Source: Macrostomum lignano
Taxonomy: Eukaryota
Reading direction: 5' to 3'
Length of the DNA stretch: 64,000 nucleotides
Assembly: GCA_002269645.1 (NCBI GenBank)
Contig: NIVC01000608.1
Coordinates: 62,001 to 126,000 of the forward strand
Under the pieces are notes generated by a model that made no database searches, was not told the origin of the DNA, and was given only the letters and a program-made list of their open reading frames with translations. Numbering within the stretch: the first letter of the stretch is position 1; the number at the start of each line of letters is the position of its first letter. Below are positions 1 through 60,523 of this stretch, piece by piece. The translations under genes were made by a program, and so were the position numbers.

Positions 1-463
1 AGAATTCCCGAGCACGAGAAATTTGAGTAGCTGCCTTAGTCCCCAGGGCGCAGTCTCGTGTCTCGGCCTACCCTGCAAGCTTTCCAGGCCAGCCCGCTAA
101 TAAGCGAATACGTGACGAGCCGCTTCAACTGCCGTGCACCTTTCGACACGTCTCGCGTGCATCTTCTGAGCAAAGTCGTTATCCCTTTGTCGTCATCCCT
201 CTAGGAGCAGACGGCTGACACGTTCGCCCTTCGGGGTTACTGCAGTAGTTGACCAATAGCATGCCATCTGAGGCCCCATTCGCTCTCCATTTTATCCCAC
301 GGCCTCTCCAATCCGATTCCTAGGCATGCTTCGCCCTATTCTCTCCAGTGCCTTCTGATAAAAACTGGGCCCAGTAAATCAGAAAGATCGCCATCTCGAA
401 CTGCCTAACAACTTCTGGTTGAATTCCTACCTTCTCTCTACTCGCAATTCCCGCCACGCTGCT

Positions 464-25500: not shown

Positions 25501-28500
25501 CCTATTCACAAAGCTGGGGCGATTCTCATGCGTGACCTATTCACAAAGCTGGGGCGATTCTCATGCGTGACCTATTTATTTACAAAGCTATGGCGATTCT
25601 CATGCGTGACCTATTTACAAAGCGAGGGACGATTTTCATACGTGACCTATTTATTTACGAAGCTATGGCGATTCTCATGCGTGACCTATTTATTTACAAA
25701 GCTGTGGCGATTCTCACGCGTGACCTATTTATTTACAAAGCTGTGGCGATTCTCATGCGTGACCTATTCACAAAGCTGGGGCGATTCTCATGCGTGACCT
25801 ATTTATTTACAAAGCTGTGGCGATTCTCATGCGTGACCTATTCACAAAGCTGGGGCGATTCTCATGCGTGACCTATTCACAAAGCTGGGGCGATTCTCAT
25901 GCGTGACCTATTTATTTACAAAGCTATGGCGATTCTCATGCGTGACCTATTTATTTACAAAGCTGGGGCGATTCTCATGCGTGACCTCTTTATTTTCAAA
26001 GCTATGGCGATTCTCATGCGTGACCTATTTATTTACAAAGCTGGGGCGATTCTCATGCGTGACCTATTTATTTACAAAGCTGGGGCAGTTCTCATGCGTG
26101 ACCTCTTTATTTTCAAAGCTATGGCGATTCTCATGCGTGACCTATTTATTTACAAAGCTGGGGCGATTCTCATGCGTGACCTATTTATTTACAAAGCTGG
26201 GGCAGTTCTCATGCGTGACCTCTTTATTTTCAAAGCTATGGCGATTCTCATGCGTGACCTATTTATTTACAAAGCTGGGGCGATTCTCATGCGTGACCTA
26301 TTTATTTACAAAGCTGGGGCGATTCTCATGCGTGACCTATTTTATTTACAAAGCGAGGGGCGATTCTCATGCGTGACCTATTTACAAAGCGAGGGGCGAT
26401 TCTCATGCGTGACCTATTTTATTTACAAAGCAGAGGCGATTCTCAAAAGACCTAGTCAGAGGTGCGAATACCTCGCGTGTTGAAACTCAGTCCCGCGGGT
26501 CAGGTGTGAAAATGAAAACAGCAGTTTAGCTCCCTCGCCAATGCTAATAAACTGAGTAGCGTGCTAATGCCAACAAAATCCTCTGAAATTTTCAAAGCTA
26601 AAAAAGAGAGCATGCACTCTAAGTCTCCAAGAGCCAGGTTAAAACTGGATTCGGCGTCCCCCTCTCCAGAGTAGGTAATTAGAGAAGCTCCTAATTACAG
26701 AGTCGGTAATTAAATATAAGCCGGCCTAGATGCAGAAAAGAAACAAAAATACTTAAAAATGGCCCCCAGCTTATAAAAAACCGACATCCAGGAATTTCTG
26801 GTCTAATTATGAAAGCCCCGGACTGCAAATTAGCTGACTTGGTCCTTCAAAGGCAATATTAAACAAGCAGTTTACCTATCAAGAAAATTACAACTACATA
26901 AAAAGCGCAAGAACACACCCAGTTTGAATGGCGACTTACGATTATCGAATGCTTTGCCGCACAGGCCGCAGTTGAACTGGTCATCATCAATGTGGTGAGT
27001 TCTCACGTGTCTCTAAAGAGGAAAATTAATTATTAATAATTTGTTTAGATTTATGCTAGAGACAGTCGCTTTCAGAAGCTCGAAACTTCTTAAGCTCGAA
27101 ACTTCTCAAGCTCGAAACTTCACAAACACAAGCTCAAACTTCACAAACACAAGCGCGAAACTTCACAAATACAAGCTCAAACTTCACAACACAAGCTCAA
27201 ACTTCACAAACACAAGCTCAAACTTCACAACACAAGCTCGAAACTTCACAAACACAAGCTCGAAACTTCACAACACAAGCTCGAAACTTCACAAACACAA
27301 GCTCAAACTTCACAAACACAAGCTCGAAACTTCACAAACACAAGCTCGAAACTTCACAAACACAAGCTCAAACTTCACAAACACAAGCTCAAACTTCACA
27401 AACACAAGCGCGAAACTTCACAAATACAAGCTCAAACTTCACAACACAAGCTCGAAACTTCACAAACACAAGCGCGAAACTTCACAACACAAGCTCGAAA
27501 CTTCACAAACACAAGCTCAAACTTCACAAACACAAGCTCAAACTTCACAAACACAAGCGCGAAACTTATCGAACTCGAAACCTTACAAGCTCGAAACTTC
27601 ACAACACAAGCTCGAAACTTCACAAACACAAGCTCAAACTTCACAAACACAAGCTCAAACTTCACAAACACAAGCGCGAAACTTCACAAATACAAGCTCA
27701 AACTTCACAACACAAGCTCGAAACTTCACAAATACAAGCTCAAACTTCACAACACAAGCTCGAAACTTCACAAACACAAGCGCGAAACTTCACAACACAA
27801 GCTCGAAACTTCACAAACACAAGCTCAAACTTCACAAACACAAGCTCAAACTTCACAAACACAAGCGCGAAACTTATCGAACTCGAAACCTTACAAGCTC
27901 GAAACTTCACAACACAAGCTCGAAACTTCACAAACACAAGCTCAAACTTCACAAACACAAGCTCAAACTTCACAAACACAAGCGCGAAACTTCACAAATA
28001 CAAGCTCAAACTTCACAACACAAGCTCGAAACTTCACAAACACAAGCGCGAAACTTCACAACACAAGCTCGAAACTTCACAAACACAAGCTCAAACTTCA
28101 CAAACACAAGCTCAAACTTCACAAACACAAGCGCGAAACTTCACAACACAAGCTCGAAACTTCACAAACACAAGCTCAAACTTCACAAATACAAGCTCAA
28201 ACTTCACAACACAAGCTCGAAACTTCACAAACACAAGCTCAAACTTCACAACACAAGCTCGAAACTTCACAAACACAAGCTCAAACTTCACAAACACAAG
28301 CTCAAACTTCACAAACACAAGCTCGAAACTTCACAAACACAAGCGCGAAACTTCACAACACAAGCTCGAAACTTCACAAACACAAGCTCAAACTTCACAA
28401 ACACAAGCTCAAACTTCACAAACACAAGCGCGAAACTTATCGAACTCGAAACCTTACAAGCTCGAAACTTCATAAACTCGAAAATCATCAAGCTTGAAAC

Positions 28501-28849
28501 TTTGTAAGCTCTAATCTCCATAAGCTCGAAATTTTGTCGAGCTCGAAACTCGAAAATCGACATTGTGAAAAAAAGGATAAAAAATTACGATAGTTCGAGC
28601 TTTTGAAATGCACCCGAAAAAACACAGCAAGCACCAAATAATAGCCAAGTTGCAAAACTTTAAATTAGTGGCGATTATACTAACCGACATGGAGTATTTG
28701 TTAACAAATTTCGCAGAGCAGAGCGGGCAACGGTGCAGATATTTATTAATATCATCGATCTCGTCAGCCGCTTCGCCGAGACTCGAACCAAGGACCTCCT
28801 CAGCTGCTGGGAGTGCCTGGCCGCAGATGCGTTGGTTTTGGTGGCTTGG
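22593..28849 (-). CDS. C2H2 zinc-finger protein, 6 fingers; exons 28849-28685, 27012-26940, 23212-22593; 5' end unresolved
   Basis: Canonical AG/GT junctions with matching phases (0, then 1) rebuild split fingers: CPLCSAKFVNKYSMS|RHVRTHH and CGLCGKAFDN|HSAFVRHLPSH. These are followed by CDKC, CQHC, CQQC and CRLC fingers; 858 nt open to the stop. Confidence 0.88.
23289..24553. repeat. Intronic 32/29-bp minisatellite
   Basis: Unit GGGGATATTCT(CCT)CACGTAGCCTTAGTCAGA. Confidence 0.95.
24554..26445. repeat. Intronic 39/35-bp minisatellite
   Basis: Unit ACAAAGCT(G/A)TGGCGATTCTCA(T/C)GCGTGACCTATTT(ATTT). Confidence 0.95.
27076..28560. repeat. Intronic 21/22-bp minisatellite with higher-order blocks
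   Basis: Unit CTC(G)AAACTTCACAA(A)CACAAG; the marker CTTATCGAACTCGAAACCTTAC occurs at about 27566, 27874 and 28438. Confidence 0.93.
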
Positions 28850-30794: not shown

Positions 30795-33025
30795 TCAAAT
30801 CACGCACGACTCGAACACTGTATCGTGGCAGTCGCACAGAAACGGCCGCTCATCAACCGGCGGATCCGGCGGCTGCACTTCCAGAGCGGCCTGTCGAAAT
30901 TCCGGCTGGCACAGCTCCAGCCAAGTCAACAGCGAGTGCTCAGGCAGCTGCAGCTGGGGTCGGTCGCCGAGTTGAAAGGCCTGCGGCAGGCGAACTCGCC
31001 GCAGACTCAGCCCGGTCGGAGGCGTTCGGCTTGCAGCGTCGGAGCAATCGGCGGACCGATCGAAGCGCAGTACGGCGGAGTCAGACCGGCCGGTCAGGGA
31101 GGCGGAGTCAACTGGCAGGTGGACGGAGCGGGCGGCCGGGAAGCAGCAGGCCAGGTAGGCCAGCAGCACGCGGAGCGGCACGGGCGGGTTGGCCAAGCCG
31201 GACACCTGCAGAAACTGACAGCGGTCGTTGGCGACGACGCTCCGCCACTGGCCGACCCTGTTGTTGGACCGCATCGCAAACGCGAGCCGGCCGGCCAGAC
31301 CGTCCGGAATTTTCAGCAGCGGCACTTCCGGCCAGGTCGGCAGCTGACAGTGCGGCTCCAGCCAGGGTAGGAAGGCATGTCCGGGGAGGCTAATGCCGCA
31401 GGCGGACAGTTGCAGCGAGTCGGGCAGGTGCACGCAGCAGCACCGGCCGGAGTGCAGGCCACGAATAGCGCCCAGAGCCTGGCGACAGTCGGCCGGGCGG
31501 CTGAATTCGGCCAGCAGACAGTCGAAGGGTATCGGCAGCAGGCGGTGAACATGGCAACGCTGTAGCTGACCGAGCGGCAGTCGACTGCTGATCTCGCCGA
31601 CAAACAGGTAGCGACAGTCCATGGCGGCGGCCTCGGCGTCCGACAGCGGCACCCAGTCGGCGTCGGCCATTGACAGGCAGCGGACGCGCTGGCCGGGCAG
31701 CACAGCGAATAGGCGCGGCCGGCTGAGGACTGGCAGATTGCCGGTCAGTCGGCGCCAATCCGGGGACTCTGCGGCGCGCTTTATCGCGGAGTCTACCGCG
31801 CCAAATTCCGGCACCAGCGGCCGCCTCCTTAATCCTGTCGGCATGGTCATTGTAAGCTTCCAGCCGATGACGCCCTTAGTGCAGCAGGGCAGAGCCAGGA
31901 CTTCGCCAAGTAAATCCGGGCTGATGAGGCTGCGAGCCAGACTCTCCAGGTCAGCTGGCATGATGTTGCGATCGAAGGGGCCGAGGCTCCAGCGGCAGAC
32001 TGGCCCGGCAACCAGTTCAAAAACGGCGTTTGGGCTGTCGGCTTCAGCGACAAGCACATCCGTGACTACCTGGAGCAACGGGCAGCGGGTGATAAGAAAC
32101 TTTAGGTCGGGATTTCAGACACTTCAGGGCGAGATTTCAGAGACACTTCAGGGCGGGATTTCAAAGACACTTCAGATCGGGATTTCAGAGACACTTCATG
32201 GCGGGATTTCAGAGACAATTCAGGGCGGGATTTCAGAGACAATTCAGGGCGGGATTTTAAAGACACTTCAGGTCATGCGGTTGTTGAAAGGCTTTCAAGA
32301 CAATTTTTGGACGGACATTCAGTAGATATATCCATGGAGTCCAACAAGTTTACATAAAAGCTGAAGCCAGCCATAAACCTTACTGGTTCATCTCTGATGC
32401 AGCCGATGCACCCCTCACAAGCGGCAGCACCTATGGGGACAGCTGGCACAGAGACAGCCGAGTCCGATTCAATCCAGACGAAACTAACGCAGTCTGCGCA
32501 TCGGATAGTGGACTCTAATTGGCGTCTAGTCAAATTATTGCGCGCATTTCGCACCAGAAAGCAGCATCCGTTAGCCGAGACAGGCGAACAGTTAATTGCA
32601 GAGGTCAATACGTCGTCTTCAACATCGTCAAAAGCGCGTTGTAACGCTCGCCGATCGGAGCTCTTAACAATTAGATAGTTTAATTGGGAAAATCCTCGCC
32701 TATGCTGACTAGCCAGAGCTGTTGAACTGCTAGAGATTGGCATTAGCCAGATTACACTGGCCCGGCCGCAGTCGCTGTTAACCCTGGCGGCAATGGCTAA
32801 GGCCTGCTCTAGGCTGGCCAGTTGGCACAGCCGGGAGCCGTCAGACAGGTAGAATTCCGCTAGCAGGCGACAGCCAGCTGACCGGATTAAGGCGCGGAGC
32901 TTCTCGCAGGGCGCGTCAACAATTTGAACAAAACTAGAGCGCTGCATTGCCTGTTGATTGCTCTCGGCATTGTAGCGATATTGGTAAGCACCAATTGCTG
33001 CACCGTGGCGTCTGCAATCCTGCAT
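30795..33025 (-). CDS. Cys-rich protein with several degenerate RRM-like domains, ~638 aa; exons 33025-32384 and 32069-30795
   Basis: Phase-0 intron (CCA|GTAAGG ... TTGCTCCAG|GTA) joins the 250-aa and 427-aa ORFs. RNP2/RNP1-like pairs: YLFVGEI...CLLAEFSRPADCRQAL and FLQVSGL...SAVLRFDRSADCSDAA; weaker ones at FLVRNA, RWSLGPF and FVQIVDA. Domains were assigned by eye. Confidence 0.65.
32108..32272. repeat. Intronic 24-bp minisatellite, ~7 copies
   Basis: Unit GGCGGGATTTCAGAGACA(C/A)TTCAG. Confidence 0.9.
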
Positions 33026-40113: not shown

Positions 40114-41756
40114 TAAGATATGTCCAATGTCCCCCCTAGAAAGAGAATTTTTAATTGCTTTTGTATTTTGCTTTTATTGCTAATTTACTAACATTGATAA
40201 TGGATTAAGGTCATCTTAACCCCCCCCCCCCTAAGTCTTAATGTGAATCTTGGCTATGTGCCTACTTATATAAAAGATTAACAACATTGAGAAAAGAATC
40301 CTTTATGTTTAATAATATTACCATTATTACAAGTAATAGTTATAGGGCCTAGGGGGCTTACAAAAATATAGCAAATCAGCCCTTAGCCAGTACTAATGCA
40401 GCAGATCTAAATTATTATTTGAAGGTAAACATGCAATGCCAATATGCTCTATGGGTAAATAGGCATTTCTAATAGGCATGTTTAAACTAAAGAAATAGAC
40501 ATGGCACTATGCCAGGATGGAATTCTTGCACGAAAGTCGTTACGCGTTTGTGCGCGCTTGTCAAATTCGTGCGCGCTTGCGCGCTTGAAAGGGGCCTACG
40601 TGCGCGCTCTCATGAAAGGTATGTGCGCACTTGTGCGCGCTTGTGACCCCTTGCGTGCATAAGTGCGCACATTTTTTAAAAAAATTGCAGAGATGTCCCT
40701 TCGACGAGTGAGAAAAAAACATCATTCATGTAAGTACAGTACATGTAATACCACATACAAATATACATGTAATGCATATTAATTTATAATTGTACGTATA
40801 TGATCCGTCAAAATCCGACCCATTTTCGCCCCAATGTTATGTTTTTGCTTTTGAGGAAATTGAAACGTTTGATGCACCATTCGTAAGAACAAGTTTTTAA
40901 TATTTTAAATACGGATTTGATTCTATGTTCGTTCAATATACCGTAAATTCCCAGCTTTATTAATTGGCCGTGTTGTCTGAACTCTTTCCTACATTTTCTC
41001 AGAGATTTTAAGAAAAAGTCACTACAGTCTTTAACAAATGCGAAAAGATGAATTTACTTTCTCATTTTTTTAATCTTTGCACAATTAACTGTTTTGAAAT
41101 TTCACGTTAAACCATTTGCTTAACTTTTTTTCTAAGAAATACTAATATTTTACGCGTACAATTTCTTTAGATTTGAAGTGACTATGCGAATGGCATTGCC
41201 AGCCATCGGTGATGGCAATTGGCAAACAATCAATATAGCGAGTTTAGTTTTCGAGTTTTATTGAAGGGCAACTGCAGTGCCTAAAATAAAAAGAATTGAA
41301 CAATTTACACTTATAATTTGGACTAATTGGACTTAGACATTTTGTTTTTGTATAGGATTTCATAACTAAACTAGCCTACAGCCCTACTACACATAGGGCC
41401 ATTAAGAATTAAGATTAAGATATTGGCTATTAAAAAGCTTTCAGTGTCAAGCATAAGCCATGAGGCAGGTCAAAGGTTTATACATTATGATTTGGAATTT
41501 ATCATTTGATTTATACTTTTTATTTTTGTAATTTTTTTCAATACTACACTGCAAGTCTGCAATACTATTTTAAAACTAAAAGCTATAGTGTTTATAAATA
41601 ACTTATATATAGTTCCACTGTTTGTTTCAATAATACTAAAATAGTAATATTTATTAATACTAATAATAAGAAATAAAATCTTTTATTTCATGATTATTTT
41701 TTAACTGATCTGCATCTTAGCATCTGCAACATTCAATAAGACAACATCATATCATA

Positions 41757-44700
41757 ATGGCTTTCCTTGCTGTTGTGCCAGGGATTTGGACAATTGCCAT
41801 TATTTCATATCTTATGATAACTGCCAAAGACACAATTGATATTGAAAATGAAATCCAGGCCCCACCAGAACCTAGTCCTACTGGCACTCCTTTGCTTTTG
41901 CAAAGAGCAACTGTTTCTGTTTTTACTGCTAGTCCAATTGACAATAGCAGTGGTGCTGGATCCATTCCTAGGCCAGATTCACCTATCACTATTACTACTA
42001 CCCCTTCTGTAAATCGAGAGGATGGACAAGCTTTTTCCTTTGGTTAGTTAAGATTATTTAACATTGAATATATAGTTTAAATAGGATGGTATATTTCAAA
42101 CTTTTCAATTAAAGTAACTGCTATTCAAATTTCTTTTTTTAGAATTATGGCGCCAAGATAAAGGTGCTGGTTCTAGTATGTCTTCAGGCCAGTCACAGCC
42201 ACTAGGCCTTGCCTTTCAGGATAGAGGTCCTAACATTTTTATATGTAAGGAATGTTATCTACAAGGAAAGGTAAATTTGGTTCACTATTTCTAAATATTA
42301 TTTATATATATTGTTTTCAATAGTTTGATTATTATAGTTGAAATATTTTAGTTGAAGTACACTGTCTCTCAAAAGAGAGACAAGGATCGGCACACTGCGA
42401 GTAAATTCCACACTGCCAAAACTTGCAATTTGGTTAGGAATTCTTCCCAGGAGGCCATCTTGCTTGTTAGAGGTATGGCTTAAGTTTTTTTAGAAGTATA
42501 ACTTCATCTGTTTTTTGATCATTTCTATTTACTACTTCATAACTATTTCACTTTCAGAACATGAAGCTGCTAAAACACATAGGACTTCAAAGAGATCTCA
42601 CCCTGTTGCTGCACCAGATGAAAGAGAGACCATTTCATGTAATTTAAAGTGTTTCTTATGGCTTTTTACACATTTTACAATATGCTTTTAGAATGAGCAA
42701 CACATTAATATAAAAGAAAAAATGAATTTTTAGCTTCTAGCGATACTGAGGCACCTCAGGCAAAGAAGACTCGTTCTGAGGCTGATCGCGAAGAAAGTAC
42801 TACTCTACCACCAACAAACTCTGGTGTAATAAACCCATCCTGTGCTGGTGACTGTGCCAATGCATTTTCCGATCTTGTTAAAAAACTGCCTAGTATGATA
42901 GGAGATATAGTTGAAAGAAAACTTGCCTTTGCCTTTGAGACATTAGGTAAGCCATCTGAGAATTCCAATCGAAGTCACAGCGCAAGTGTAACTAACAGCG
43001 AGTTTGTATTGGACTTGGAGAAGTGGATGACGCTAAACTCTATTGTAGACGTAGCGCGGGAAGTCCCAGACATAGAATTATTTTTGAATGAAGAAGATGG
43101 ACACTCTGTAGTAAGGTGTAAAACATGCTGGGAAGCTTTAGATACTCGAAAGCTGAGTAAAATGTCTGTTTTTCAAGTGTCTCGTCACTATAGTGATAAT
43201 TGCACATTGGGCACAGGTGTTTACATGAATCCCAGCGAAACTGAGTTGATTATAAAAGGGACTTCTAATAAAAAAGATACACAGTTTTGGCGAAATTTCA
43301 AGAGCAAACTGCGAGGGCATCTTTTAGGGTCATCAAATAATTCACAGGGACGGCAGCATGCGCTCTCTGTAAAAAAACAAAAGGATCAAGCAGAAGAAGA
43401 CAAACTATCTCACGAAATTGCTAAACGCTTAGTCCGCTCAGCAATCCAAACTATTAGATCCAAGGCTGGTGCTGTACACTATGAAAATCAAGTAACTTTT
43501 CTAGAACTCAATGGCTGTCAAATTGGAAATCGGGGGCACGGAAGAAAACAGCTTTCAATTATTATTAATGCAGCTAACGAATGGATCAATGATGAAAACC
43601 GGAAGCTTCTTTTGACGCCATTGGAGTCTACAGGTCTCCCTCCACATTTCATGGGAATTGTTGATAAAGCGACACAGACCCGCGAGACAAACCAGGCTAT
43701 CTTGCTTGCAACTATAAGCCGAGGGGAAAGAGTCGCATTCCCAGTTGGTGCCCCATGTGTTTATTTTGTACAAAATGAAGACGTCTGCGAGGAGAACTCC
43801 AGTGCTTCAGTAAATAGTGATGTTTCTGATTCTGGTGAATCGAATGAATCAGATTCTGACACAAGCACGAGTCAGGACTTAGATCGCGTAGTAGTTACTG
43901 GGGGGAGTCTGGCTGAGCTAGCGCAGCTTATCTTTCGCACGATTCAAGATGAATTAAAACTGGGGGAAAAGGACCTCTTGCGGTATTGTGGTACAGCAGC
44001 TGATGGCCAGTATCAACCGGCAATGTTTGCAAATGAAATAACCCGCTTGTCAGGGCGTAGCAATATCGCGGACAGTTCTACATTTCAACCTGTAATATGG
44101 GATGTATCGCACTTACTTAATTTAGCGGTGTTAGATGTTCGCGAGTCAAAGTACGGTAAACCTGCGGCAGATTGCTTAACATTGTTTATTGAAAGGGCCA
44201 ACGAGTTTAACCATTTAATGGGAAGGGGCAAAAACCATACTTTAATGTCAAAAGTGGCGTCCAAAATGAAGGAAAAAGTGTCTGTACCAATACCATATGC
44301 AACACAGCGATTTACAAGCTCATCTGTTAAGCAGTGGGTCAAAATTGAAAGAGCTTACAGTCTGTATGCAGCAACTTTTCGTCGCATTCACGATGAAGAT
44401 GAAGACTTTCCCCTCCAATATAGGGTTTTGGGAGCAGACTTTGCTACCGATCTGTGTCTGCTACTAGATGTGTTTCAACCACTAGTTGAAATGATGGAGC
44501 TGGCCCAGGGATTGCAATTCAATCACTGGAAAATTGTTTCATGGGGGAATCGCCTTCTACAAATGATGGATAGAAAGTGTCGTCCATTATATGACAAGCA
44601 CCGAGCTGACATTGAAGGTATGAGCTTTAAGAAGGTGCGGCTTCTAGAGGGCTGGCATGTAATTGGCGAAGAATATGTCGGGCAAGAAGCAGAAAGTAGT

Positions 44701-45693
44701 CGAGGAAGACGTCGGAGGTGTAATAAGAAGAAAGTATACCTTTGGGAGGAGAGAACAACTAATGATGCAGTCAGAGAGGTCGAAGTCGTTTCCAGCTCTC
44801 TCCGTCAAAGTGTGGCTAATCGATTAAATAAGGGAACCTCAGCATGCTCAAATATCTTAGCCAAGTTTATGGACTTTGAGCAGCTACTATACCTTTTATG
44901 TGGTTCCCGTGAAACTGCTTCCAATGGTACAGCCAAGCCTATTCGGCAGTGCATAAACTTTTCTGGCTTCATGGAGGCTGGTGAGCCAGAGTTTTGTTCG
45001 TTTTTTAATTATGTGGTTTCACTCCCATATATTTCTGAGGTGGCTGAATCAGACGAATTATTTTCAGAACTGATACTTGGAAACCATAGCTACGTACATG
45101 TAAAGTACAAGAATGTTATTGAATCCCTCTTTTGGGGTCACCTTGCTCCGTATGGGATACAGTGCCTTGTATGTTCCAAGTCAAAAAAGCCAATTAAGGG
45201 CCAAATCATTAATTCCATAAAAATTGAAGAGAATTCGCGCCTCCAGCAGGTTTTTAAAGTTGAAACTGATGTACGCTGTTATGACAACTGTATTCTGGAT
45301 GAGGCAGCACTTATAAAACAATTATACACAGTTCAACCAGTCTTTGAAGAAGCTGGTCGAGCTGTGTGCATTCTTCTTGACGTTGCACTGAACACAGGTG
45401 GTGGGGAGGCAATTGCTGAAAGTTTCTACGGCGTAATGCGTAGCCAACGCATTATGGGAAGGCAAAAAAATAAAGCCTTGCAGTTGCGAACGAAGATCGA
45501 TTGGTGCCTCCCGCCCATCAGCTCTCTAATCGAACGTTCAGTCAACGAAATCGCGTCTAAGTATTTAAAGATTGCGGCATGTCCACTTGCATCCGATCCC
45601 CGTACCATCCGCGGATATTTAAATAGTGGGTTTAGAAGCGCAGTTCAGCGCCGAAAAAATTGTGTTAAACCACGGTTGGGCCACCTCGTGTAA
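41757..45693 (+). CDS. Spliced transposase, ~1191 aa; exons 41757-42042, 42143-42270, 42352-42472, 42558-42638, 42734-45693
   Basis: Four GT-AG introns with consistent phases (1,0,1,1) run without stops into the 932-aa ORF. Putative catalytic motifs GIVDKAT, AADGQY, WDVSHLLNL (DxxH) and GGEAIAES. The start of exon 1 is uncertain. Confidence 0.8.
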
Positions 45694-46066
45694 TGCCGAC
45701 TGTAACGTCTGACTAGCATTTATACGCAAGTTGAAATGAACCACAATGCATGTACAATGACTTGTTAAGATGTTTGACTCAATAAATCATTCGCTATATA
45801 ATGCGTAAACAATTCAGAACTCTCCAGGCAATAACCACAAATGGACAAGCACACCAGCACGCTTAGTGCAACAAAACTTATATTTGTCTTGAATTTTAGA
45901 ATGAGGGGACGCTAATAATATGCCTAGCGTACATGAAGTGCGGGGCAGATAGAAAAACAAGAGTGGGGGGTTTGTACTTGTACCTAGGCATGCAGGCCAC
46001 AGAGAAAAGGACAGAAATGAAGATGGGACGACGCAGCACAGAGAGGGTTGAATGTACATCTAGCTA

Positions 46067-46314
46067 CAGGGGCGGATTTGGGGGGCGTCCCTAAAATAAG
46101 TACTTTTGACGGAACATAGTGCACCCCCAGAAAAAGCCAAAGTTTGCGCCCCCCCCCCCTAAACTTGATTTTTTCGCCCCGAAACACCATTTTTTGCGCC
46201 CTAAGCTAATATCTTATCGCCCCCTACATGCATTTTTAAGCCCCTAAATTGGCACCCTTATACTCGTGTTGGCGCCCAAACTTAGACCGCCCCCAAAAAA
46301 TTGATCTGCCACTG
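46067..46314. mobile_element. hAT-type MITE (248 bp) nested in the large transposon
   Basis: TIR CAGGGGCGGAT / revcomp CAGTGGCAGAT; flanks TCTAGCTA and TATAGCTA (7/8-identical 8-bp TSD); G- and C-run interior. Confidence 0.75.
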
Positions 46315-47890
46315 TATAGCTACATGTAACTTGCAGGAAGGGCAAAGAAAAATCATTATTTTAATTAAACATGTACATGAAACGCAACATTTCGATTTGA
46401 ATTTTGCGACAATATACATCAACCCAACTATACTAAATCCAACTATACTAAACGTCTAATATTATACTAAAAACATAACTGTACTAAAATTGTCATTTTT
46501 GCAGGTGTTTCTCTTTTTCTAATTAATTAAAAGTTATTATTAAAACAAAAATATACACAGTTGCATACATGTACTCAAAAATATACAAAGCAATATTTTT
46601 TATGAATGTAAAACGTGTCATTTTTTTTTTGTTGCCTTACTCGTAATTGCATAATCGAAAAGCAAAAATAGTAGCAAATGTACACAAAATACTTCGATTG
46701 TTAAAATTTGATAAAATTTGTATACAACATGGTTATGTGCGCTCAAGTTCTCTTATTTTTAGCTGGCGACCCTGGCGTGCGCACTTGCGCGCTGCTCCAA
46801 AAACGTGCGCGCGCGTTTTCCTTCCTCTGAGCAAGAATTCCATCCTGGGCACTATGTCTATAATGCTAGAAAGAGCAGCAATCTTCTTGAATCATTCGTT
46901 AAACTATTTTTTTGACATTTTTTGCATTTTCTTCACTTTAAAAGCTGATTGTAGCATGTTAGGACGCCTGGCTAATACTGATACTTTTAGTTGAGGCCTA
47001 ATTTTTTCCATTCCATATGATGTAGGCCTATATGTTGAGGCCTGAGACAGCTGAGTCTGAGTCATTGATAGCCATAGGATTGATAACAAAGTAAAACGTA
47101 TCCAGTTAATAGAAAATATTTGGTACCTTTGTCTTTCTCATATTTACTTAACAGGGCTACTTTTGCTCCCGGTTCATTCGTCATACAATATTACAAATTA
47201 GAATAAGACAGACGATCCACATGCAGAACAAGTTAGCAACCAATCTATTCCTTTTACACTTGTAATATTTTTTTATGTAACGTATGTACATAAAGTGACT
47301 TCTTATCGAATTGTTTCTCAATAAATTTACCTAGAATTAACTTTTTTTAGCAAAAGACGCCTTAGAATACTATATTTGCCTTTTATGTTTGTATACATTT
47401 AATTTTGTTATTATTTTCACGATAAAAAACCAAGCAACTAATCAAAAATCTAGTTTGCTCCGCATTTGAACAGCGAGCAGTGCCATTCTCCGTCTTTAAT
47501 TTTCAACAGATTTATATGCATTTTACTCGAATTATATCTACTGGTAAGTAATTAATAGGGTTTTGTTCAAATTTTTATTTAATTCTGGGCCTTATTTTGC
47601 ATAGTAACATGTATAGTAATACCGTAATACTGATTAAGAATGGGGCAGCCACACACGCAAGACGTATCGACGTAGTACATCGCTGCCTACTCAAAAAATC
47701 CAGGCAATGATTTAAAGTATCAATTGTAGATGACATAATAATAAACTGTAGATGTGCAGGTACAAGCTGCAGTACATTATACATGTAGCTATAAATTTTT
47801 ATAAATATTTATTATATTCATGAGCCCCGTCCCTGACCTTAAATTAGGTTTGGTTAAAAACTCCTGGAATTCCATCAGCTGACACTGGCA

Positions 47891-50721: not shown

Positions 50722-52175
50722 GGGAGTACGACGTTTGCTTGCGGGAAGTTTGCTTGCCGAGCTTTGCTTGCCGAGCTTTGCTTGCAGGAAATTTACTTGC
50801 AGGAACTTTGCCTGCCGAACTTTGCTTGCCGAACTTTGCTTGCAGGAATTTCGCTTGCCGAACTTTGCTTTCTAGAATTCGCAATCGCACAATCGCAATA
50901 TTTTAACTTGCGGAATTATTTTCTTATTTGCTTGCTTGTTTTGATTGCTTGTGAAGTTGGTCAGTCAATTATTACTTACTACAGATGCTTTGCAAGTAGA
51001 TTCTTATCAGGGTCGACGTAAACTGACTTGACACCATAAAAGCTTTGAAACTTGGCTTATAGAGTTTTGTATTCTAAGAATTAAGTATATAGAATGCTTA
51101 GAGATTTAGTATTGGTAGATACTAGATAGGGATCGGTAGCAGTATAAATCTTTGTAGTTCCTGATTTCAGCACGATTGAGCAGATATGATAATTGCAGTG
51201 ATGCTAATGTATAATAATGCATATACTAATAATATATTAGTATATAAAATGTAATAATCCGCCATATCCTCATACAAAATCATAACACTCTATAGGCGAC
51301 TTCCACGAATCTTAGAAAATGAAAATTAGAAATACAAGAGCTCAAAAATAGGTTCTTTAAGGCTCCGCAGGAAAACTTTGGCTGGCAAACCTCGCAAGCA
51401 AATTTCCTGCAAGCAAACTTCGGCAAGGAAAGTTCCTGCAAGCAAACTTCGGCAAGCAAAGTTCCTGCAAGCAAACTTCGGCAAGAAAAGTTCCTGCAAG
51501 CAAACTTCGGCAAGCAAAGTTCCTGCAAGCAAAATTCGGCAAGAAAAGTTCCTGCAAGCAAACTTCGGCAAGAAAAGTTCCTGCAAGCAAACTTCGGCAA
51601 GCTTATGTGCAGCAAGCAAAGTTCCTGCAAGCAAACTTCGGCAAGCAAAGTTCCTGCAAGCAAACTTCGGCAAGCAAAGTTCCTGCAAGCAAACTTCGGC
51701 AAGCTTATGTGCAGCAAGCAAAGTTCCTGCAAGCAAACTTCGGCAAGCAAAGTTCCTGCAAGCAAACTTCGGCAAGCTTATGTGCAGCAAGCAAATTTCC
51801 TGCAAGCAAAATTCGGCAAGCAAAGTTCGGCAAGCAAACTTCGGCAAGCAAAGTTCGGCAAGCAAACTTCGGCAGGCAAAATTCCGCAAGCAAAGTTCGG
51901 CAAGCAGACTTCGGCAAGCAAAGTTCGGCAAGCAAATTTCCTGCAAGCAAAATTCGGCAAGCAAAGTTCGGCAAGCAAACTTCGGCAGGCAAAATTCCGC
52001 AAGCAAAGTTCGGCAAGCAGACTTCGGCAAGCAAAATTCCGCAAGCAAAATTCGGCAAGCAAAGTTCGGCAGGCAAAGTTCGGCAAGCAGACTTCGGCAA
52101 GCAAAGTTCCGCAAGCAAAAGTCCCGCAAGCAAACTTCGGTAAGCAAATTTCTCGCAAGCAAATTTCATAGACCC
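50722..52175. mobile_element. Foldback/Mutator-like element with internally repetitive, asymmetric inverted arms
   Basis: Left arm (TTTGCTTGCCGAAC)n at 50722-50876 is inverted relative to the right arm (GGCAAGCAAAGTTCCTGCAAGCAAACTTC)n at 51385-52175; GGG...CCC termini; TSD GTTGTCGCT at 50713-50721 and 52176-52184. Confidence 0.85.
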
Positions 52176-53195
52176 GTTGTCGCTGTCCATCCAATATGCA
52201 GGCAAAAACCTCGCTTCATCGTCTCTATTCTTAATTTCAACCATCATATCCGACGCTCTATAGGCTCTAAACTTTGGTCTAGAGAAGAAGATGCAAAAGA
52301 ATCGGCGGTTCCCACAACGATATACCCAATATCATGCTTTTTCTGCACTCCTGGATTTCACAAACCCGGAACCCGCCTGTCTAAGGCTAACTTTATCTGA
52401 ACCTCTCAGCGGTGATAAACAAGTCCTGTCTGGGTTAGCAGAGATTAACCCCCGTTTGTCCGGCAACTCTTGGCGTGCTCCAGCCTGATCTTGTCGGCAC
52501 CTCAGCAGCCCTATCCGGATCCCGGCAGACCCTGTACCGTCCAACCAAACCACTGGCCCAGAAAGCGGTTCCCACTGGACCCCCGCGTTTGTTACGCCCG
52601 TCCGGACCACCGGACCACAGCCCTTTTCAACAGCAGCAACACTTGCATGCATAAAAAACAATATTCATCAGTTCATCAGCTTTGACTCTTCCTCAATACG
52701 CGTGAGAAATACGGAATTAGACGCAAATCACTATTCTGCAGTTGTTGCGAGGCCGCGTAGCCTAGGCAACTTGAGACTTCTCGCTTGAGTATCCATGCAG
52801 CCATAGGTCCATTGTCAAATATACCGGTAGTAGTCCGCTCAGTGCAGTGAGATCATCCGCAATGTACAGAAAAACTCCGATGAGCCAGAGCCATTTTGAA
52901 TTATTTATGCATGGTATCCAAGTGTGCGCCACTCCACTGCTCACAAATGGACGGTCTTAGCGCTGGCTTAGGATTGGCAGAGACGATAGAATTTTCCATA
53001 GCTATGCTTATTTGGGCTGAGGACTCAGGATAAAAAAGGCGTATAGCTATCTCTTGTAACAAGGCACTATTGGAAAGTAAGATAAGTATGGCTCTTTTTT
53101 CAAAAACAACTATAATATCCTAAACCTCGGATCCGAAAAGACGCTGAAAAATTTTCTGCTTCCGTTTTCCCGCTTGGCCACCAGTCATCGGCGCC

Positions 53196-56192
53196 ATGGT
53201 GGAAAGACGCGGCGGAGACGATAAAACGGCTGCCAAGGCGACAGTCGACTCTATGCTCACTAGTCCGCCGAAGAATGCTCAGCAGTTGTACGCCGCGTTG
53301 CTTGACGAGGTGCGTGTTATTCGTAAGGAGCTCGGCCTGCTCGACAAGGAGTTCTACGAGGATGCCAGCTCCCTGGAATTCGTTTCCCGCTGGATGCCGG
53401 TGGTTCGCGAGGCCATGCGCTGCCACAATCTGGCTGAGCTCAACTCCCTGCGCCAGATTCAATCAGTCATCTTCCTGTCCCGCGACCCCGACGTGAAGGA
53501 GATGTACCCGGGCCTGACACCGGTCGGGCCGGACACGTGCGCTCAGCTTTGCCAGCTGCAGAACAAACTATTAGCTTTCATGCCAGGACGCTTCACTCTA
53601 GTCATGGACAAGCTGGGACGCGTGCACAGTCTGTGCGAAAAATACCTTCTGTCATTTCATAGCAGCGACTCTCCGTACCAAATCGACACGGCTCAGAAGT
53701 ACATGCTTAGCCGTCGTACCTGGGCAAATCAGGCTGCCGAGAGGGCAAAAGCAGTGCTGTACAATTCCCACCTATTCCTGCACGAGTCCCTCAGCGTCAG
53801 CCGGCTAGCGCGAGGCGCAACCGATCTCCTGCGCCGGGCAGACGCTTCCTCGGCGCCGTTCCTCGGTCTGTTCGCTGACGCCTGCGAGAACCTGCGCGCA
53901 AGCCTGGACTCTCTGGTTGATTGGATCAGCTCGGACAGGAACTACCCGGTGAGACTGAAGATCGACTTGTCGACGCTGGACAAGAATCGAGTGGAGCTGG
54001 AAAAACTGGCGAAAGCGCAGCGACACCAGCTGCATATGGCGCAGTACCGCAGCAAATCTCTGCAATCGGAAAAGGCAAAGCTTCACGTCGAGCTTCAAGC
54101 GATGGCAGACAGAGAGGCTGAATTGCTTTTTGAAGAAGAGCAGCTCCAACAGGATCTGGGAAATGCCAAGTTGGACCTCGAGATCAAGGAATTTCGCAAG
54201 GAGGAGCTACGCCGAGAGGTCAAAGAAAGCACCAGCGCCTCGAATGCGGCCGCAATGGACGCGGAGCTGTCCAGCCTAACAGAGCAGCTTCGAAGGCTCC
54301 GGTCGGACATGCCGCAGATGGAGCGGAAGCTGGTCAGCCTGCGCTCCAAGCTAGTTGTCATCGAGGAAAAGCAGAAACGCTTCGCCGAAGTTACTACGGC
54401 GCTCAACGACACGGAGGCACTGATGACGAAGCTGCGTGCCGAGGTGTCTGACGCTGGCGCACAACTGCAGAAGGCGGAGCAAACGCTTGAACGCTGCGCC
54501 GAAATTTACCGATTGAAGATGAGTGCAGAAACGCCAGAGAGAATCTTCTTCGGCCTGCCGCTCGACGGTCTGGAAAAGGAGCAACAGAAATCTACGCAGC
54601 AGCAGCAGTCCATGAACGCAAACGGTGGGAAGAGCCAGTCTGCGCCAGGCAGCGGCCCTTCTCAGTTGTCGTCAAGAGGCGGAGAGATTCCCTCCGCAAC
54701 TCCGTTTGGGCACCATGCGAATGCATCGTCAACTGCAAGCACAGTTGGTTAGTCGGTTGGGGATGTCAACTTAAGCACCAGAATAAAGCTCGAAGTAAAG
54801 CTTCAGACCAAAATGTGGTGACCGGAACAACGGATTAGCTAATGTATATACATACTAATACATACTAATGTATTTCAGTGCTTAAGATCAAAGATGAGCA
54901 AGCATATTAGTATAAGATTAAAAGACAGAACGGTGGATATTAACGATGGTATGCGACCGAGGGAACTGTAGAGTGGGAGATATAGCCATAGACTATACAC
55001 TAGTGTGACAAGCTTTGACTGGGGCTACGTCATGTCCCTCTGTAACGGGAGTGACGTGAACATTGATACGAACAGTAAGAAGATTTCCTAATACTTTGTT
55101 GTCAAGGAGCCGAGGCGAGAACATACGCTATAGTGTTATCAGAGGCTGTTTAGCATGTCGTAACATTTCAAACAATGACACGTGATGGTCGGTCACGGAA
55201 CAAAGCGGTCGGGGGCCCGCCGCCGGCGATTGAGCGTTTATAGCGTAATTCATATCGCTCAGGTCTGTTTGCTTGTGGTTAGTCGGTTGGGGATGTCAAC
55301 TTAAGCACCAGAATAAAGCTCGAAGTAAAGCTTCAGACCAAAAGCGATTGGAATCAAAATTCCACGAGCGCATGTCCCCTGGGAGCTTAAGTGAGGAACC
55401 TGGATGGGGATGTCTGGGCGTCTCTAGTCAACTGGTCTGACTGAAAATGTATCTTTTTAAGGGTATCCTTGGAGTATTCAAAGTTCAACTATTGTTAATG
55501 TCCGTTTTGTTTCGTTTTGGTTGATGCCCGGTGGGGAAGAGTTGCCATCAATTCGCTTCTTACATTTGACAAACCGAGCACTTCCACTCGAGCTTTAGCA
55601 ACTTACACTTTGCTCTTTACGAATGCTTCCAAATAATCTTTTTTCAGGCGACAAAAGAATGCGTCGTTCGGAGACGGCTGAAATAAATGGTAATTTTGAA
55701 CAGCTGTTGACAGTTAAGCTAAAAAATCAGCTAATAAATATTTTCATTTACTCAATTTTAGCCGGCAGCGCATTCGATCAGGTCTGTTTGCTTGTGGCGC
55801 ACAAAATTGAGCGCGACTGGAAGCGGCTCTACCGGGCACTGCCGTTTGTGCCGCAGCGCAGTCGGGAGACCATCGACCGGGACATCGCCGAGTTGCAGCG
55901 CAGTTTTGTTGCCGATTCGCTGTTCGAGTGCGCCTGGCGGGCTATCCAACGCTGGCGGCGCTATCACCGGCGGGCCAAGCTGCTGGAGCTGCGGTCCGCT
56001 CTCGAGCGCATGCGGCGCGGGGACGTTGTCGACGATATCGACGCCTTCCTGCGGCCACCGGACGGCGAGCCCCGGTCGGCGAAGGACGACAAGCACAATG
56101 ATCCGCTGCCGGAACATCTTGACAAGCAGCTGATGGCGTTCTACCGACATCTGGAGCCGGCCGATTCGCAGCAGCACGACGTTGTAAATTAA
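53196..56192 (+). CDS. Coiled-coil protein with C-terminal death domain, ~674 aa; exons 53196-54747, 55648-55689, 55762-56192
   Basis: Strong Kozak context GCCATGG; long heptad-rich segment; phase-1 introns (G|GTTAGT, TTTTCAG|, G|GTAATT, TTTTAG|). The last exon has a death-fold pattern: LVAHKIERDWKRLYRAL...AWRAIQRW...LLELRSALERMRRGDVVDDI. Confidence 0.82.
55259..55343 (+). repeat. 85-bp chimeric duplicate made of an exon-3 piece and an exon-1/intron-1 junction piece
   Basis: 55259-55278 equals 55778-55797; 55276-55343 equals 54746-54813; the two parts overlap at TGG. Confidence 0.92.

Positions 56193-58955: not shown

Positions 58956-60523
<1,568 letters not shown>

What the first reader, a model, noticed from the sequence alone, without database searches (positions are those of the whole stretch)
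40512..46848. Apparently intact autonomous DNA transposon of unclear superfamily (DxxH transposase, CCAGG TIR, 8-bp TSD)
Perfect TIRs, a perfect TSD and an uninterrupted ORF indicate a recent and possibly active insertion. The core has D (IVDKAT), D (ADGQY), DxxH (WDVSH) and a distant E (EAIAES) after a long insertion domain, the layout of the hAT/P/MuDR/Kolobok/Dada group. It has hAT-like HxLNL context and TSD length but Asp instead of the usual hAT Cys, a CC- rather than CA/TA- terminus, and no obvious hAT C-terminal dimerisation motif by eye. It may be an undescribed or poorly described lineage between hAT and Dada/P. This is the best candidate for novelty in the window.
Basis: partly seen in the sequence, partly recalled or inferred. 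Interest (0 to 1): 0.8.

Follow-up and report, generated by a model that had tools for sequence, protein, structure and literature searches.

The report
Recently active hAT-like flatworm transposon
This is a real, very recently mobile 6.3-kb cut-and-paste DNA transposon of the flatworm Macrostomum lignano; its transposase has the fold of the hAT enzyme Hermes but is too divergent in sequence for any hAT model to detect, and it belongs to an unnamed family found across animals.

Summary
Window 40512-46848 carries perfect 18-bp TIRs (CCAGGATGGAATTCTTGC) and a perfect 8-bp TSD. The same element sits at four more loci of the M. lignano assembly. Each has perfect TIRs and its own 8-bp TSD, and the copies are 99.7-99.9% identical.

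The transposase is 1191 aa from five GT-AG exons. The "uninterrupted ORF" is only the last exon. Only the window copy is fully open.

No Pfam model, PDB sequence, hAT C-terminal profile or Dada sequence matches it. Two AlphaFold models (core pLDDT 89.7) have Hermes, the hAT transposase, as their only significant PDB match (probability 1.0, TM 0.47-0.60, 7-9% identity).

The residues D428, D541, D574xxH577, R643-F644 and E1009/E1013 are conserved in a family of 628 representative clusters. Named members come from a flatworm, an amphipod, a tunicate and a jellyfish, all labelled uncharacterised. Two distant relatives also have 5'-CCA termini and 8-bp TSDs.

Best reading: an autonomous hAT-type cut-and-paste element of a deeply divergent hAT-related lineage. 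There is no support for a Dada or P link. Repbase, Dfam and Novosib could not be checked, so the novelty is unproven.

The parts
40504..40511 (.). [quoted passage not shown]
   Evidence: Read directly. It is identical to 46849-46856. Other copies of the element have other 8-bp TSDs.
40512..40529 (+). Left terminal inverted repeat, CCAGGATGGAATTCTTGC
   Evidence: 18 nt and 100% complementary to 46831-46848. It is identical in all six sequenced copies.
40550..40672 (.). Left subterminal repeats, GTGCGC(G/A)C(TTG) units; probable transposase binding sites
   Evidence: Direct-repeat families D1 and D2. All 12 GTGCGC sites of the element lie within 160 bp of the left end or 110 bp of the right end, and none lies in the 6 kb between. 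The number of units differs between copies, as indels at 40557 and 40632.
41757..45693 (+). Transposase gene: five exons (41757-42042, 42143-42270, 42352-42472, 42558-42638, 42734-45693) giving 1191 aa
   Evidence: The spliced translation equals P0154 exactly, with GT-AG introns. This is the only one of six copies with the whole CDS open.
42244..42420 (+). N-terminal C2H2-type zinc finger (CKEC...H...H), split by intron 2
   Evidence: Read from the translation. The corresponding finger of relatives P0049 and P0003 gives weak, sub-threshold hits to Pfam zf-C2H2_12 (E 1.9e-5 and 7.6e-3). It is poorly modelled (pLDDT below 50).
43117..43359 (+). Second CxxC...H...H module (RCKTC ... GHL ... QH), BED-like by position; probable DNA-binding domain
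   Evidence: The C..C, W..FK and H...H columns are conserved in alignment A1. The model shows a beta-hairpin plus helix with pLDDT about 80. There is no Pfam zf-BED hit.
43663..43665 (+). Catalytic Asp 1 (D428 in P0001 numbering; IVDKAT), on beta-1 of the RNase H-like fold
   Evidence: D in 87 of 95 family members. It sits on strand E44-50 of the core model.
43780..43890 (+). Acidic Ser/Asp-rich loop between beta-3 and alpha-1; most aligned relatives lack it (P0010 has a shorter one)
   Evidence: Most of the other 20 aligned relatives have gaps here, and P0010 has a shorter acidic insert. pLDDT is below 50 in both models.
44002..44004 (+). Catalytic Asp 2 (D541; AADGQY), just after beta-4
   Evidence: D in 68 of 80 members. 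The exceptions are the P0049/P0071 lineage. Strand E156-161 of the core model.
44098..44112 (+). W-DxxH motif (W573, D574, H577; WDVSH), at the end of beta-5 and start of the next helix
   Evidence: W in 76 of 83, D in 69 of 83 (never C), H in 67 of 81. Its position in the model matches the CxxH site of hAT enzymes (PMC4763223 for the role of Hermes H268).
44308..44313 (+). R643-F644 (TQRFTSS): by position, the counterpart of the hAT 'RW' motif (Hermes W319)
   Evidence: R in 71 of 78 and F in 69 of 78 members. The correspondence rests on order and spacing only and is an inference.
44113..45405 (+). Large, mostly alpha-helical insertion domain of about 430 aa between DxxH and the catalytic Glu, with three small beta-sheet inserts
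   Evidence: Secondary structure of the core model, pLDDT mostly above 90. Alignments to Hermes cover about 670-700 columns.
45406..45420 (+). E1009 and E1013 (GGGEAIAESFY), on the helix that closes the RNase H-like fold; one of them is the third catalytic residue
   Evidence: E1009 is E in 52 of 63 members. The motif G.EA..ESFYSVM is the family consensus. Helix H631-642 of the core model.
46737..46810 (.). Right subterminal GTGCGC repeats
46831..46848 (-). Right terminal inverted repeat
46849..46856 (.). [quoted passage not shown]

Best explanation
Window 40512-46848 is an autonomous class II (cut-and-paste) transposon of Macrostomum lignano that transposed very recently.

Its 1191-aa transposase has a DDE RNase H-like catalytic core interrupted by a large helical insertion domain. 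This is the architecture of the hAT transposase Hermes. In sequence, however, it lies outside everything that current hAT models recognise.

It belongs to a metazoan-wide family with these shared features: 5'-CCA termini, 18-21-bp TIRs, 8-bp TSDs, WDxxH in place of CxxH, RF in place of RW, and an enlarged insertion domain.

Inferred mechanism, by analogy with Hermes:
1. The N-terminal zinc-finger modules bind the subterminal GTGCGC repeats, and the ends are paired by a transposase oligomer.
2. The D428/D541/E1009-or-E1013 site, helped by H577, nicks each end.
3. The flanking 3'-OH attacks the opposite strand, giving hairpins on the flanking DNA and releasing the element.
4. The element's 3'-OH ends attack target phosphates 8 bp apart. 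Gap repair then gives the 8-bp duplication.

Shown here: mobility, TIRs, the 8-bp stagger, residue conservation and the Hermes-like fold. Inferred: DNA binding by the zinc fingers, the flank hairpin, and which of the two Glu residues is catalytic.
For: Mobility:
- Five loci have identical perfect TIRs, distinct perfect 8-bp TSDs and unrelated flanks.
- Copies are 99.7-99.9% identical.
- The five-exon CDS is intact in the window copy.

Fold:
- The full-length AF2 model has 440 residues with pLDDT at or above 90.
- The core model has pLDDT 89.7 and pTM 0.88.
- In both Foldseek PDB searches the top 12 hits are all Hermes chains: probability 1.00, E from 1e-5 to 2e-2, target-normalised TM 0.47-0.60 for the near-full-length alignments, about 670-720 aligned columns.
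- The next hits are ISCth4 (E 0.019) in the first search and unrelated proteins (E above 0.3) in the second.

Catalytic layout: D on beta-1, D after beta-4, DxxH after beta-5 and E on the closing helix. These residues are conserved in 80-90% of family members.

Family features: relatives with about 27-32% identity on ENA contigs have the TIR CCAGGGTGCATTCCATGT with TSD CATGTTTG (L012), and the TIR CCATACTGGAAAGTATGGCAG with TSD GCGAGCGC (L014).

Subterminal repeats are confined to both ends, as in hAT elements (PMC4763223).
Against: - No sequence method links it to hAT. Pfam at E up to 10 gives no hAT model for any of 22 members.
- The PDB searches with the sequence and with the profile are empty.
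- hhalign against 16 PF05699 domains gives probability 0.2%. Against two fungal hAT transposases it gives 0.1%.
- The termini start with CC, not the CA/TA of hAT.
- The hAT Cys is always Asp. The Trp two residues after the first Asp in Hermes (W182) has no counterpart, since the motif here is DKST.
- The structures are predictions. Per-residue superposition of the active sites could not be inspected.
- Kolobok, eukaryotic MULE, Dada and Novosib have no solved structures, so the Foldseek result cannot rank them.
- Four of the five loci carry frameshifts, so current activity is not proven.
Confidence: 0.8

Rival explanations
1. It is an ordinary member of a hAT subgroup already catalogued in Repbase or Dfam (for example hATm, hATw or hAT19, or an entry for M. 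lignano). It would then nest inside hAT in a proper phylogeny, so nothing is new beyond one more family.
For: It has an 8-bp TSD, short TIRs, subterminal repeats and a Hermes-like fold. Repbase holds many divergent invertebrate hAT groups that could not be consulted here.
Against: The one divergent Repbase subgroup for which data were found, hATx-6 of Hydra, still matches Pfam zf-BED and Dimer_Tnp_hAT (PMC8721813). None of the 22 members of this family matches any hAT model at E up to 10. The termini are CC rather than CA/TA, and the motif is DxxH rather than CxxH in all 83 aligned members. Every named database entry is 'uncharacterized' or 'hypothetical'. No paper in the library cites the gene identifiers.
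Confidence: 0.25
2. It belongs to Novosib, a poorly characterised superfamily. Novosib is also reported to make 8-bp TSDs (my recollection) and its transposase has no Pfam model.
For: The TSD length fits, from memory rather than from a source read here. Novosib's RNase H-like domain lacks similarity to any Pfam domain and is poorly defined (PMC5751038), which is also true of this protein.
Against: No Novosib sequence was available, so nothing was tested directly. [quoted passage not shown] WDxxH is one of the best conserved motifs of this family.
Confidence: 0.1
3. It is not a mobile element but a host gene, or a domesticated transposase, that was copied by the recent whole-genome or segmental duplications of M. 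lignano.
For: M. lignano is a neopolyploid. L002 and L003 are the same locus sequenced twice, with the same TSD and flanks and 2 mismatches.
Against: The other four loci have unrelated flanks and neighbouring genes. Similarity stops exactly at the perfect TIRs, and each locus has its own 8-bp duplication. Catalytic residues are intact.
Confidence: 0.02
4. It is a member of, or intermediate to, the P or Dada superfamilies.
For: It shares the DxxH motif (Dada uses DxxH; PMC3706591). It shares the 8-bp TSD with P.
Against: hhalign against Dada-U6 transposases gives probability 1.3%. Dada lacks TIRs, makes 6-7-bp TSDs and targets small RNA genes. The seven TSDs and flanks read here share no common target sequence, although the insertion sites were not scanned for small RNA genes. 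No THAP or Tnp_P_element Pfam hit was found. No P-element transposase structure appears among the listed Foldseek matches.
Confidence: 0.03

Closest known systems
hAT superfamily (Hermes, hobo, Ac, Tol2, Buster)
   Same: - 8-bp TSD, short TIRs and subterminal repeats.
- N-terminal zinc-finger modules.
- A DDE RNase H-like core with a large helical insertion domain.
- The same motif order, with D..T for hAT D.WT, DG.Y for DNA(S/T)N, DxxHxxNL for CxxHxxNL, RFxSS for RWNS, and ESFYS for SERxFS.
- Hermes is the only significant structural match in the PDB.
   Different: - There is no detectable sequence similarity to any hAT model or to Hermes.
- Asp replaces the Cys of CxxH in all members.
- There is no Trp two residues after the first Asp.
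- Phe replaces the Trp of the RW motif.
- The termini are 5'-CCA rather than 5'-CA/TA.
- The spacings are longer. D2 to D/CxxH is 33 residues here against 17 in Hermes. DxxH to E is about 430 against about 300. The Hermes figures are from my knowledge of D248, C265, H268 and E572.
- The element (6.3 kb) and protein (1191 aa, five exons) are about twice the usual hAT size, which is 2.5-3 kb and 600-680 aa (PMC12637253).
Dada superfamily
   Same: It has a DDE transposase with DxxH after the second Asp, and the protein is long and multi-exon.
   Different: Dada has no TIRs, makes 6-7-bp TSDs and targets small RNA genes strictly (PMC3706591). There is no profile similarity.
P superfamily (P element, THAP9)
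   Same: It makes an 8-bp TSD and has a C/DxxH motif and an insertion domain within the RNase H fold.
   Different: There is no THAP domain, no Tnp_P_element match and no structural match among the listed Foldseek hits. P termini start with CA.
Novosib superfamily
   Same: It is reported to make an 8-bp TSD (recollection), and its transposase has no Pfam model (PMC5751038).
   Different: This could not be compared directly. Novosib is not listed among the superfamilies that carry C/DxxH (PMC9587614).
IS256 / MULE (ISCth4 transposase)
   Same: It gave a weak structural hit in one search (E 0.019), and the group carries C/DxxH.
   Different: The hit did not recur with the better core model. MULE TSDs are 9-10 bp. 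No MULE Pfam match was found.

Membership tests
hAT superfamily | 8-bp target site duplication | tested here: met
   Five M. lignano loci and two distant relatives all have perfect 8-bp TSDs.
hAT superfamily | Short TIRs with 5'-YARNG (CA/TA) termini | tested here: not met
   The TIRs are 18-21 bp, but they start CCAGG, CCAGG and CCATA in the three elements with defined ends. Shifted by one base, CAGGA and CAGGG resemble YARNG, but the outer C is part of the element.
hAT superfamily | Hermes-type architecture: RNase H-like DDE core split by a large all-alpha insertion domain | tested here: met
   The AF2 models are confident. Foldseek returns only Hermes chains as significant hits, with probability 1.0 and TM 0.47-0.60 normalised to Hermes. 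This is a prediction, and residue-level superposition was not available.
hAT superfamily | CxxH motif after the second catalytic Asp | tested here: not met
   The position is D in 69 of 83 members, N in 6 and E in 5, and never C. The His is conserved in 67 of 81. DxxH is the variant known from Dada and other superfamilies.
hAT superfamily | hAT C-terminal dimerisation domain signature (Pfam PF05699) | tested here: not met
   There is no hit at E up to 10 in 22 members. hhalign against 16 PF05699 sequences gives probability 0.2%. By eye, ESFYS...R..L resembles SERVFS...RNRL, but that is not significant.
hAT superfamily | Sequence match to hAT RNase H-like models (PF27041, PF27039, PF14291, PF04937, PF14372) or to Hermes | tested here: not met
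   The same Pfam models do detect ordinary hATs on neighbouring DNA (L006, L014).
hAT superfamily | N-terminal BED zinc finger | tested here: inconclusive
   There are two CxxC...H...H modules. No PF02892 hit was found. Two relatives give weak zf-C2H2_12 hits.
hAT superfamily | Subterminal short repeats at both ends | tested here: met
   GTGCGC occurs 12 times, only within 160 bp of the left end or 110 bp of the right end. L012 has GTCCGGCGTGGAG repeats at both ends.
hAT superfamily | Excision through hairpins on flanking DNA | not testable with these tools
   This needs in vitro cleavage assays or excision footprints.
hAT superfamily | Phylogenetic nesting among the Ac, Buster and Tip clades | not tested
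   No Repbase or Dfam protein set was available, and the sequence is too divergent for the few hAT sequences on hand.
Dada | No TIRs, 6-7-bp TSD, insertion into small RNA genes, Dada transposase similarity | tested here: not met
   This element has 18-bp TIRs and an 8-bp TSD, and the seven TSDs and flanks read share no common target sequence; the sites were not scanned for small RNA genes. hhalign gives probability 1.3%. The Dada features are from PMC3706591.
P | THAP DNA-binding domain and Tnp_P_element catalytic domain | tested here: not met
   No Pfam hit was found, and no P transposase structure is among the listed Foldseek matches.
Kolobok | TTAA 4-bp TSD | tested here: not met
   The TSDs are 8 bp and varied. 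The Kolobok feature is from PMC9587614.
MuDR/MULE | 9-10-bp TSD and MULE / Transposase_mut domains | tested here: not met
   The TSD is 8 bp and there is no Pfam hit.
Zisupton/KDZ | KDZ transposase domain (PF18758) | tested here: not met
   No Pfam hit was found, and the fold is Hermes-like.
Novosib | Similarity to the Novosib-1_CR transposase | not testable with these tools
   No Novosib sequence is held. The only evidence is indirect.

The most novel reading that the evidence does not exclude
The family is a previously unnamed lineage at or near superfamily rank, sister to hAT and widespread in animals. Its signature is 5'-CCA termini, an 8-bp TSD, WDxxH, RF, and an insertion domain of about 430 aa. 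The window copy would be a currently active autonomous element in M. lignano, the one flatworm with stable transgenesis.
Probability: 0.4. Interest if true: 0.6.

Novelty: new variant of a known kind. Interest (0 to 1): 0.5.

Why it matters
- Classification. Eukaryotic cut-and-paste transposons are sorted into about 20 superfamilies, mostly by sequence. This family is invisible to every sequence model tried but has the hAT fold. If that holds, it extends the known limits of hAT or adds a sister lineage. It would also show which hAT features are dispensable: the Cys of CxxH, the two active-site Trp residues, and the CA/TA termini.
- Annotation. At least 628 representative protein clusters in animal genomes and metagenomes could be annotated as transposases. 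At present the named ones are called 'uncharacterized'.
- A possible tool. Copies 99.7-99.9% identical and one intact CDS suggest a live endogenous transposon in Macrostomum lignano. It is a possible source of insertional mutation and a candidate gene-transfer tool for that model.
- Domestication. A related lineage that has lost its catalytic residues and has no TIRs hints that this transposase has also been domesticated.

Tried and rejected
- The search for homologous proteins timed out twice. It later gave only four close hits for the core and only the query itself for the profile.
- Pfam scans of the ORF, of ten relatives and of all 22 alignment members found no transposase family.
- PDB sequence and profile searches were empty.
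- hhalign against Dada, the hAT C-terminal domain and two fungal hAT transposases assembled from L006 was negative in every case. The fungal profile is thin and partly mis-spliced, so that test is weak.
- The Yuan and Wessler 2011 paper, which holds the superfamily signature strings, is not in the library.
- A prefix search for 'Novosib' returned only papers about Novosibirsk.
- No TIRs or TSDs could be found around the Hyalella copy (L011) or on L013 and L015.
- No MITE-like partner of the TIR exists in the window. The 3-mismatch match at 60436 has no inverted mate.
- A 9-bp TSD with CAGG termini was considered and rejected.

Full report
**Observation**

The window comes from Macrostomum lignano. 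The annotated 1191-aa protein P0154 (PAA79914.1, BOX15_Mlig019669g6) is encoded exactly by the window.

At 40512-40529 and 46831-46848 there is an 18-nt, 100% complementary inverted repeat, CCAGGATGGAATTCTTGC. Shuffled sequence gives 0.05 matches on average. It is flanked by the direct repeat GCACTATG at 40504-40511 and 46849-46856.

The exons are 41757-42042, 42143-42270, 42352-42472, 42558-42638 and 42734-45693. All introns are GT-AG, and the spliced product equals P0154.

**Mobility**

I fetched the contigs that encode the five paralogous M. lignano proteins of the same 90% cluster. Each carries the same element with perfect TIRs. Each has its own perfect 8-bp duplication:

| Locus | TSD |
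|---|---|
| L001 | TGGCCATC |
| L002 and L003 (one locus sequenced twice) | GCGAATAT |
| L004 | CTGCTCAG |
| L005 | GCCGTGGT |
| window | GCACTATG |

Flanks and neighbouring genes differ between loci.

In L004 and L005 the base before the left TSD does not match the last TIR base. So the duplication is 8 bp and the outer C/G belongs to the element.

The copies are 99.7-99.9% identical over about 6.35 kb. They differ mainly by single-base changes and by the number of subterminal repeat units.

Only the window copy keeps the whole CDS open. The other four loci have one or two single-base indels. These may be real or may be long-read assembly errors.

This is therefore a transposon family that moved very recently. 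It is not a duplicated host gene.

**Ends**

The hexamer GTGCGC occurs 12 times in the element. Every site lies within 160 bp of the left end or 110 bp of the right end, and none lies in the 6 kb between. Subterminal repeats of this kind are the usual transposase binding sites of hAT and similar elements (PMC4763223).

**The protein by sequence**

- Pfam finds nothing for the ORF, for ten relatives, or for any of the 22 aligned members, even at E up to 10. That includes Dimer_Tnp_hAT, the newer ZBED1 RNase-like models, DUF4371, DUF659, zf-BED, THAP, Tnp_P_element, MULE and KDZ.
- The PDB sequence search and profile search are empty.
- A full HMMER scan of 1.84 billion representatives finds 628 clusters at E up to 1e-3.
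- The named members come from M. lignano, the amphipod Hyalella azteca, the tunicate Styela clava and the jellyfish Sanderia malayensis. All are called hypothetical or uncharacterized.
- No paper in the library cites the gene identifiers.

The family alignment and an hmmalign of all retrieved members show these conserved motifs, in P0001 numbering:

| Motif | Residue | Conservation |
|---|---|---|
| PSTGLPPHFxxTxDKST | D428 | D in 87 of 95 |
| ADGQYQ | D541 | D in 68 of 80 |
| WDxxHWLDL | D574 | D in 69 of 83, never C |
| WDxxHWLDL | H577 | H in 67 of 81 |
| RFxSS | R643, F644 | 71 and 69 of 78 |
| GxEAxxESFYSVM | E1009 | E in 52 of 63 |

By order and context these parallel the hAT blocks D.WT, DNA(S/T)N, CxxHxxNL, RWNS and SERxFS.

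The parallel is not statistically detectable. hhalign gives probability 0.2% against 16 genuine PF05699 domains. It gives 0.1% against two fungal hAT transposases assembled from L006. It gives 1.3% against Dada-U6 transposases taken from the supplement of PMC3706591.

**The protein by structure**

AlphaFold2 with the 22-sequence alignment gave a model with 440 residues at pLDDT 90 or above. A second model covered the core only (window 43519-45591, 59 sequences). It reached mean pLDDT 89.7 and pTM 0.88.

The core has the RNase H order beta1-beta2-beta3-alpha1-beta4-alpha2-beta5:
- D428 lies on beta1.
- D541 lies just after beta4.
- W-DxxH lies at the end of beta5.
- An insertion domain of about 430 aa follows. 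It is mainly helical with three small sheets.
- A closing helix carries E1009 and E1013.

In both Foldseek searches of the PDB, the 12 best hits are all chains of the Hermes hAT transposase. Probability is 1.00, E runs from 1e-5 to 2e-2, and TM normalised to Hermes is 0.47-0.60 over about 670-720 columns for the near-full-length alignments (one shorter chain alignment, 8edg_A, gives 0.34), at 7-9% identity.

The next hit is the IS256-family ISCth4 transposase at E 0.019 in the first search. In the second search the next hits are unrelated proteins at E above 0.3. No P-element, Transib or RAG1 chain appears among the 50 matches listed in either search. Kolobok, eukaryotic MULE, Dada and Novosib have no solved structures, so they cannot be ranked this way.

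**Family-level termini**

Two distant relatives, about 27-32% identical, sit on long ENA contigs of unidentified eukaryotes and have intact ends:
- L012 5656-11815 has the TIR CCAGGGTGCATTCCATGT, the TSD CATGTTTG, and subterminal GTCCGGCGTGGAG repeats.
- L014 6352-11919 has the 21-bp TIR CCATACTGGAAAGTATGGCAG and the TSD GCGAGCGC.

So 5'-CCA termini, 18-21-bp TIRs and 8-bp TSDs are properties of the lineage, not of one element. The same L014 contig also carries an ordinary Hermes-like hAT that Pfam detects without difficulty. The failure to detect this family is therefore not a matter of host or composition.

**Interpretation**

The best-supported reading is an autonomous cut-and-paste transposon whose transposase is a very distant structural relative of hAT enzymes. 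I infer the hAT mechanism:
1. Zinc-finger modules bind the subterminal repeats.
2. The DDE site, helped by the His of DxxH, nicks the ends. This His is essential for hairpinning in Hermes and Kat1 (PMC4763223).
3. Hairpins form on the flanking DNA.
4. Integration occurs with an 8-bp stagger.

Only the stagger, the ends, the conserved residues and the fold are shown here.

**Differences from canonical hAT**
- Asp replaces Cys in CxxH.
- There is no counterpart of Hermes W182.
- Phe replaces W319.
- Termini are CC rather than CA/TA.
- Spacings are longer.
- The element and protein are about twice the usual size, which is 2.5-3 kb and 600-680 aa (PMC12637253).
- The hAT C-terminal signature is not detectable.

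The one divergent Repbase hAT subgroup for which I found data, Hydra hATx-6, still matches Pfam zf-BED and Dimer_Tnp_hAT (PMC8721813). This family therefore lies further out than that.

**Alternatives**

| Alternative | Outcome |
|---|---|
| Dada | Rejected. It has no TIRs, 6-7-bp TSDs and small RNA gene targets (PMC3706591), and there is no profile similarity. |
| P | Rejected. There is no THAP or P domain and no structural hit. |
| Kolobok | Rejected. Its TSD is TTAA. |
| MULE | Rejected. Its TSD is 9-10 bp. |
| KDZ/Zisupton | Rejected. There is no KDZ domain and the fold is Hermes-like. |
| Novosib | Untested. I recall that it makes 8-bp TSDs, and its transposase is poorly defined and has no Pfam model (PMC5751038). 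It is not listed among the superfamilies with C/DxxH (PMC9587614), which argues mildly against it. |
| Already in Repbase or Dfam under some name | Could not be checked. |

**Verdict**

It is wrong about the single ORF and unsupported on the link to Dada or P. I rate this a new variant of a known kind (hAT-type), with moderate interest.

Noticed in passing
L010 6550-10218 (proteins P0049 and P0157; also the P0071 cluster): A lineage of the same family has lost the catalytic residues (D541 to N, DxxH to E/N..Q/Y, E1009 to P). It is a single intronless ORF of 1010-1222 aa with no flanking TIRs, and it recurs nearly unchanged on several metagenome-derived eukaryotic contigs. It has an N-terminal SPIN-DOC-type zinc finger (Pfam zf-C2H2_12, E 1.9e-5). 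It is a candidate domesticated transposase of an unidentified host.
   Followed up: partly
window 9829-13359 (- strand): A 1176-aa ORF with aspartyl protease, RVT_1, RNase H and integrase domains: an LTR-retrotransposon pol gene that looks intact.
   Followed up: no
window 419-1699 (+ strand): A 426-aa ORF with a rhodopsin-family 7TM receptor domain (7tm_1, E 4.5e-29), probably a host GPCR gene.
   Followed up: no
window 27041-28507, 30795-32078, 51378-52400, 53196-54752: Four ORFs of 340-518 aa with no Pfam match. Their nature is unknown.
   Followed up: no
window 40557 and 40632 against L001-L005: The number of subterminal GTGCGCGCTTG units differs between copies. The window copy lacks about 30 bp that all the others have at 40632, and L002/L003 have an extra 19 bp or so at 40557. 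The putative transposase binding array is therefore unstable.
   Followed up: partly
window 43780-43890: A 37-aa Ser/Asp/Glu-rich low-complexity loop lies inside the catalytic core of the M. lignano transposase, between beta-3 and alpha-1. Most aligned relatives lack it, and P0010 has a shorter acidic insert at the same position. It is predicted to be disordered.
   Followed up: no
P0025 and P0188 (UniRef A0A1I8FTV9 and A0A1I8IA18, M. lignano): M. lignano holds a second, divergent member of the family (about 24-37% identity). Its gene models are named 'SWIM-type' and 'HECT domain-containing', probably through fusion with neighbouring genes.
   Followed up: no
L014 17219-18556; L012 11941-12231: Ordinary hAT fragments (DBD_Tnp_Hermes with Dimer_Tnp_hAT; weak DUF4371) lie next to the divergent elements on the same contigs.
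   Followed up: no
window 46060-46300: The 3' non-coding part of the element holds a run of short C-rich repeats (GCGCCCC, CGCCCC and CCCCC tracts). One of them varies in length between copies, at 46148-46149.
   Followed up: no
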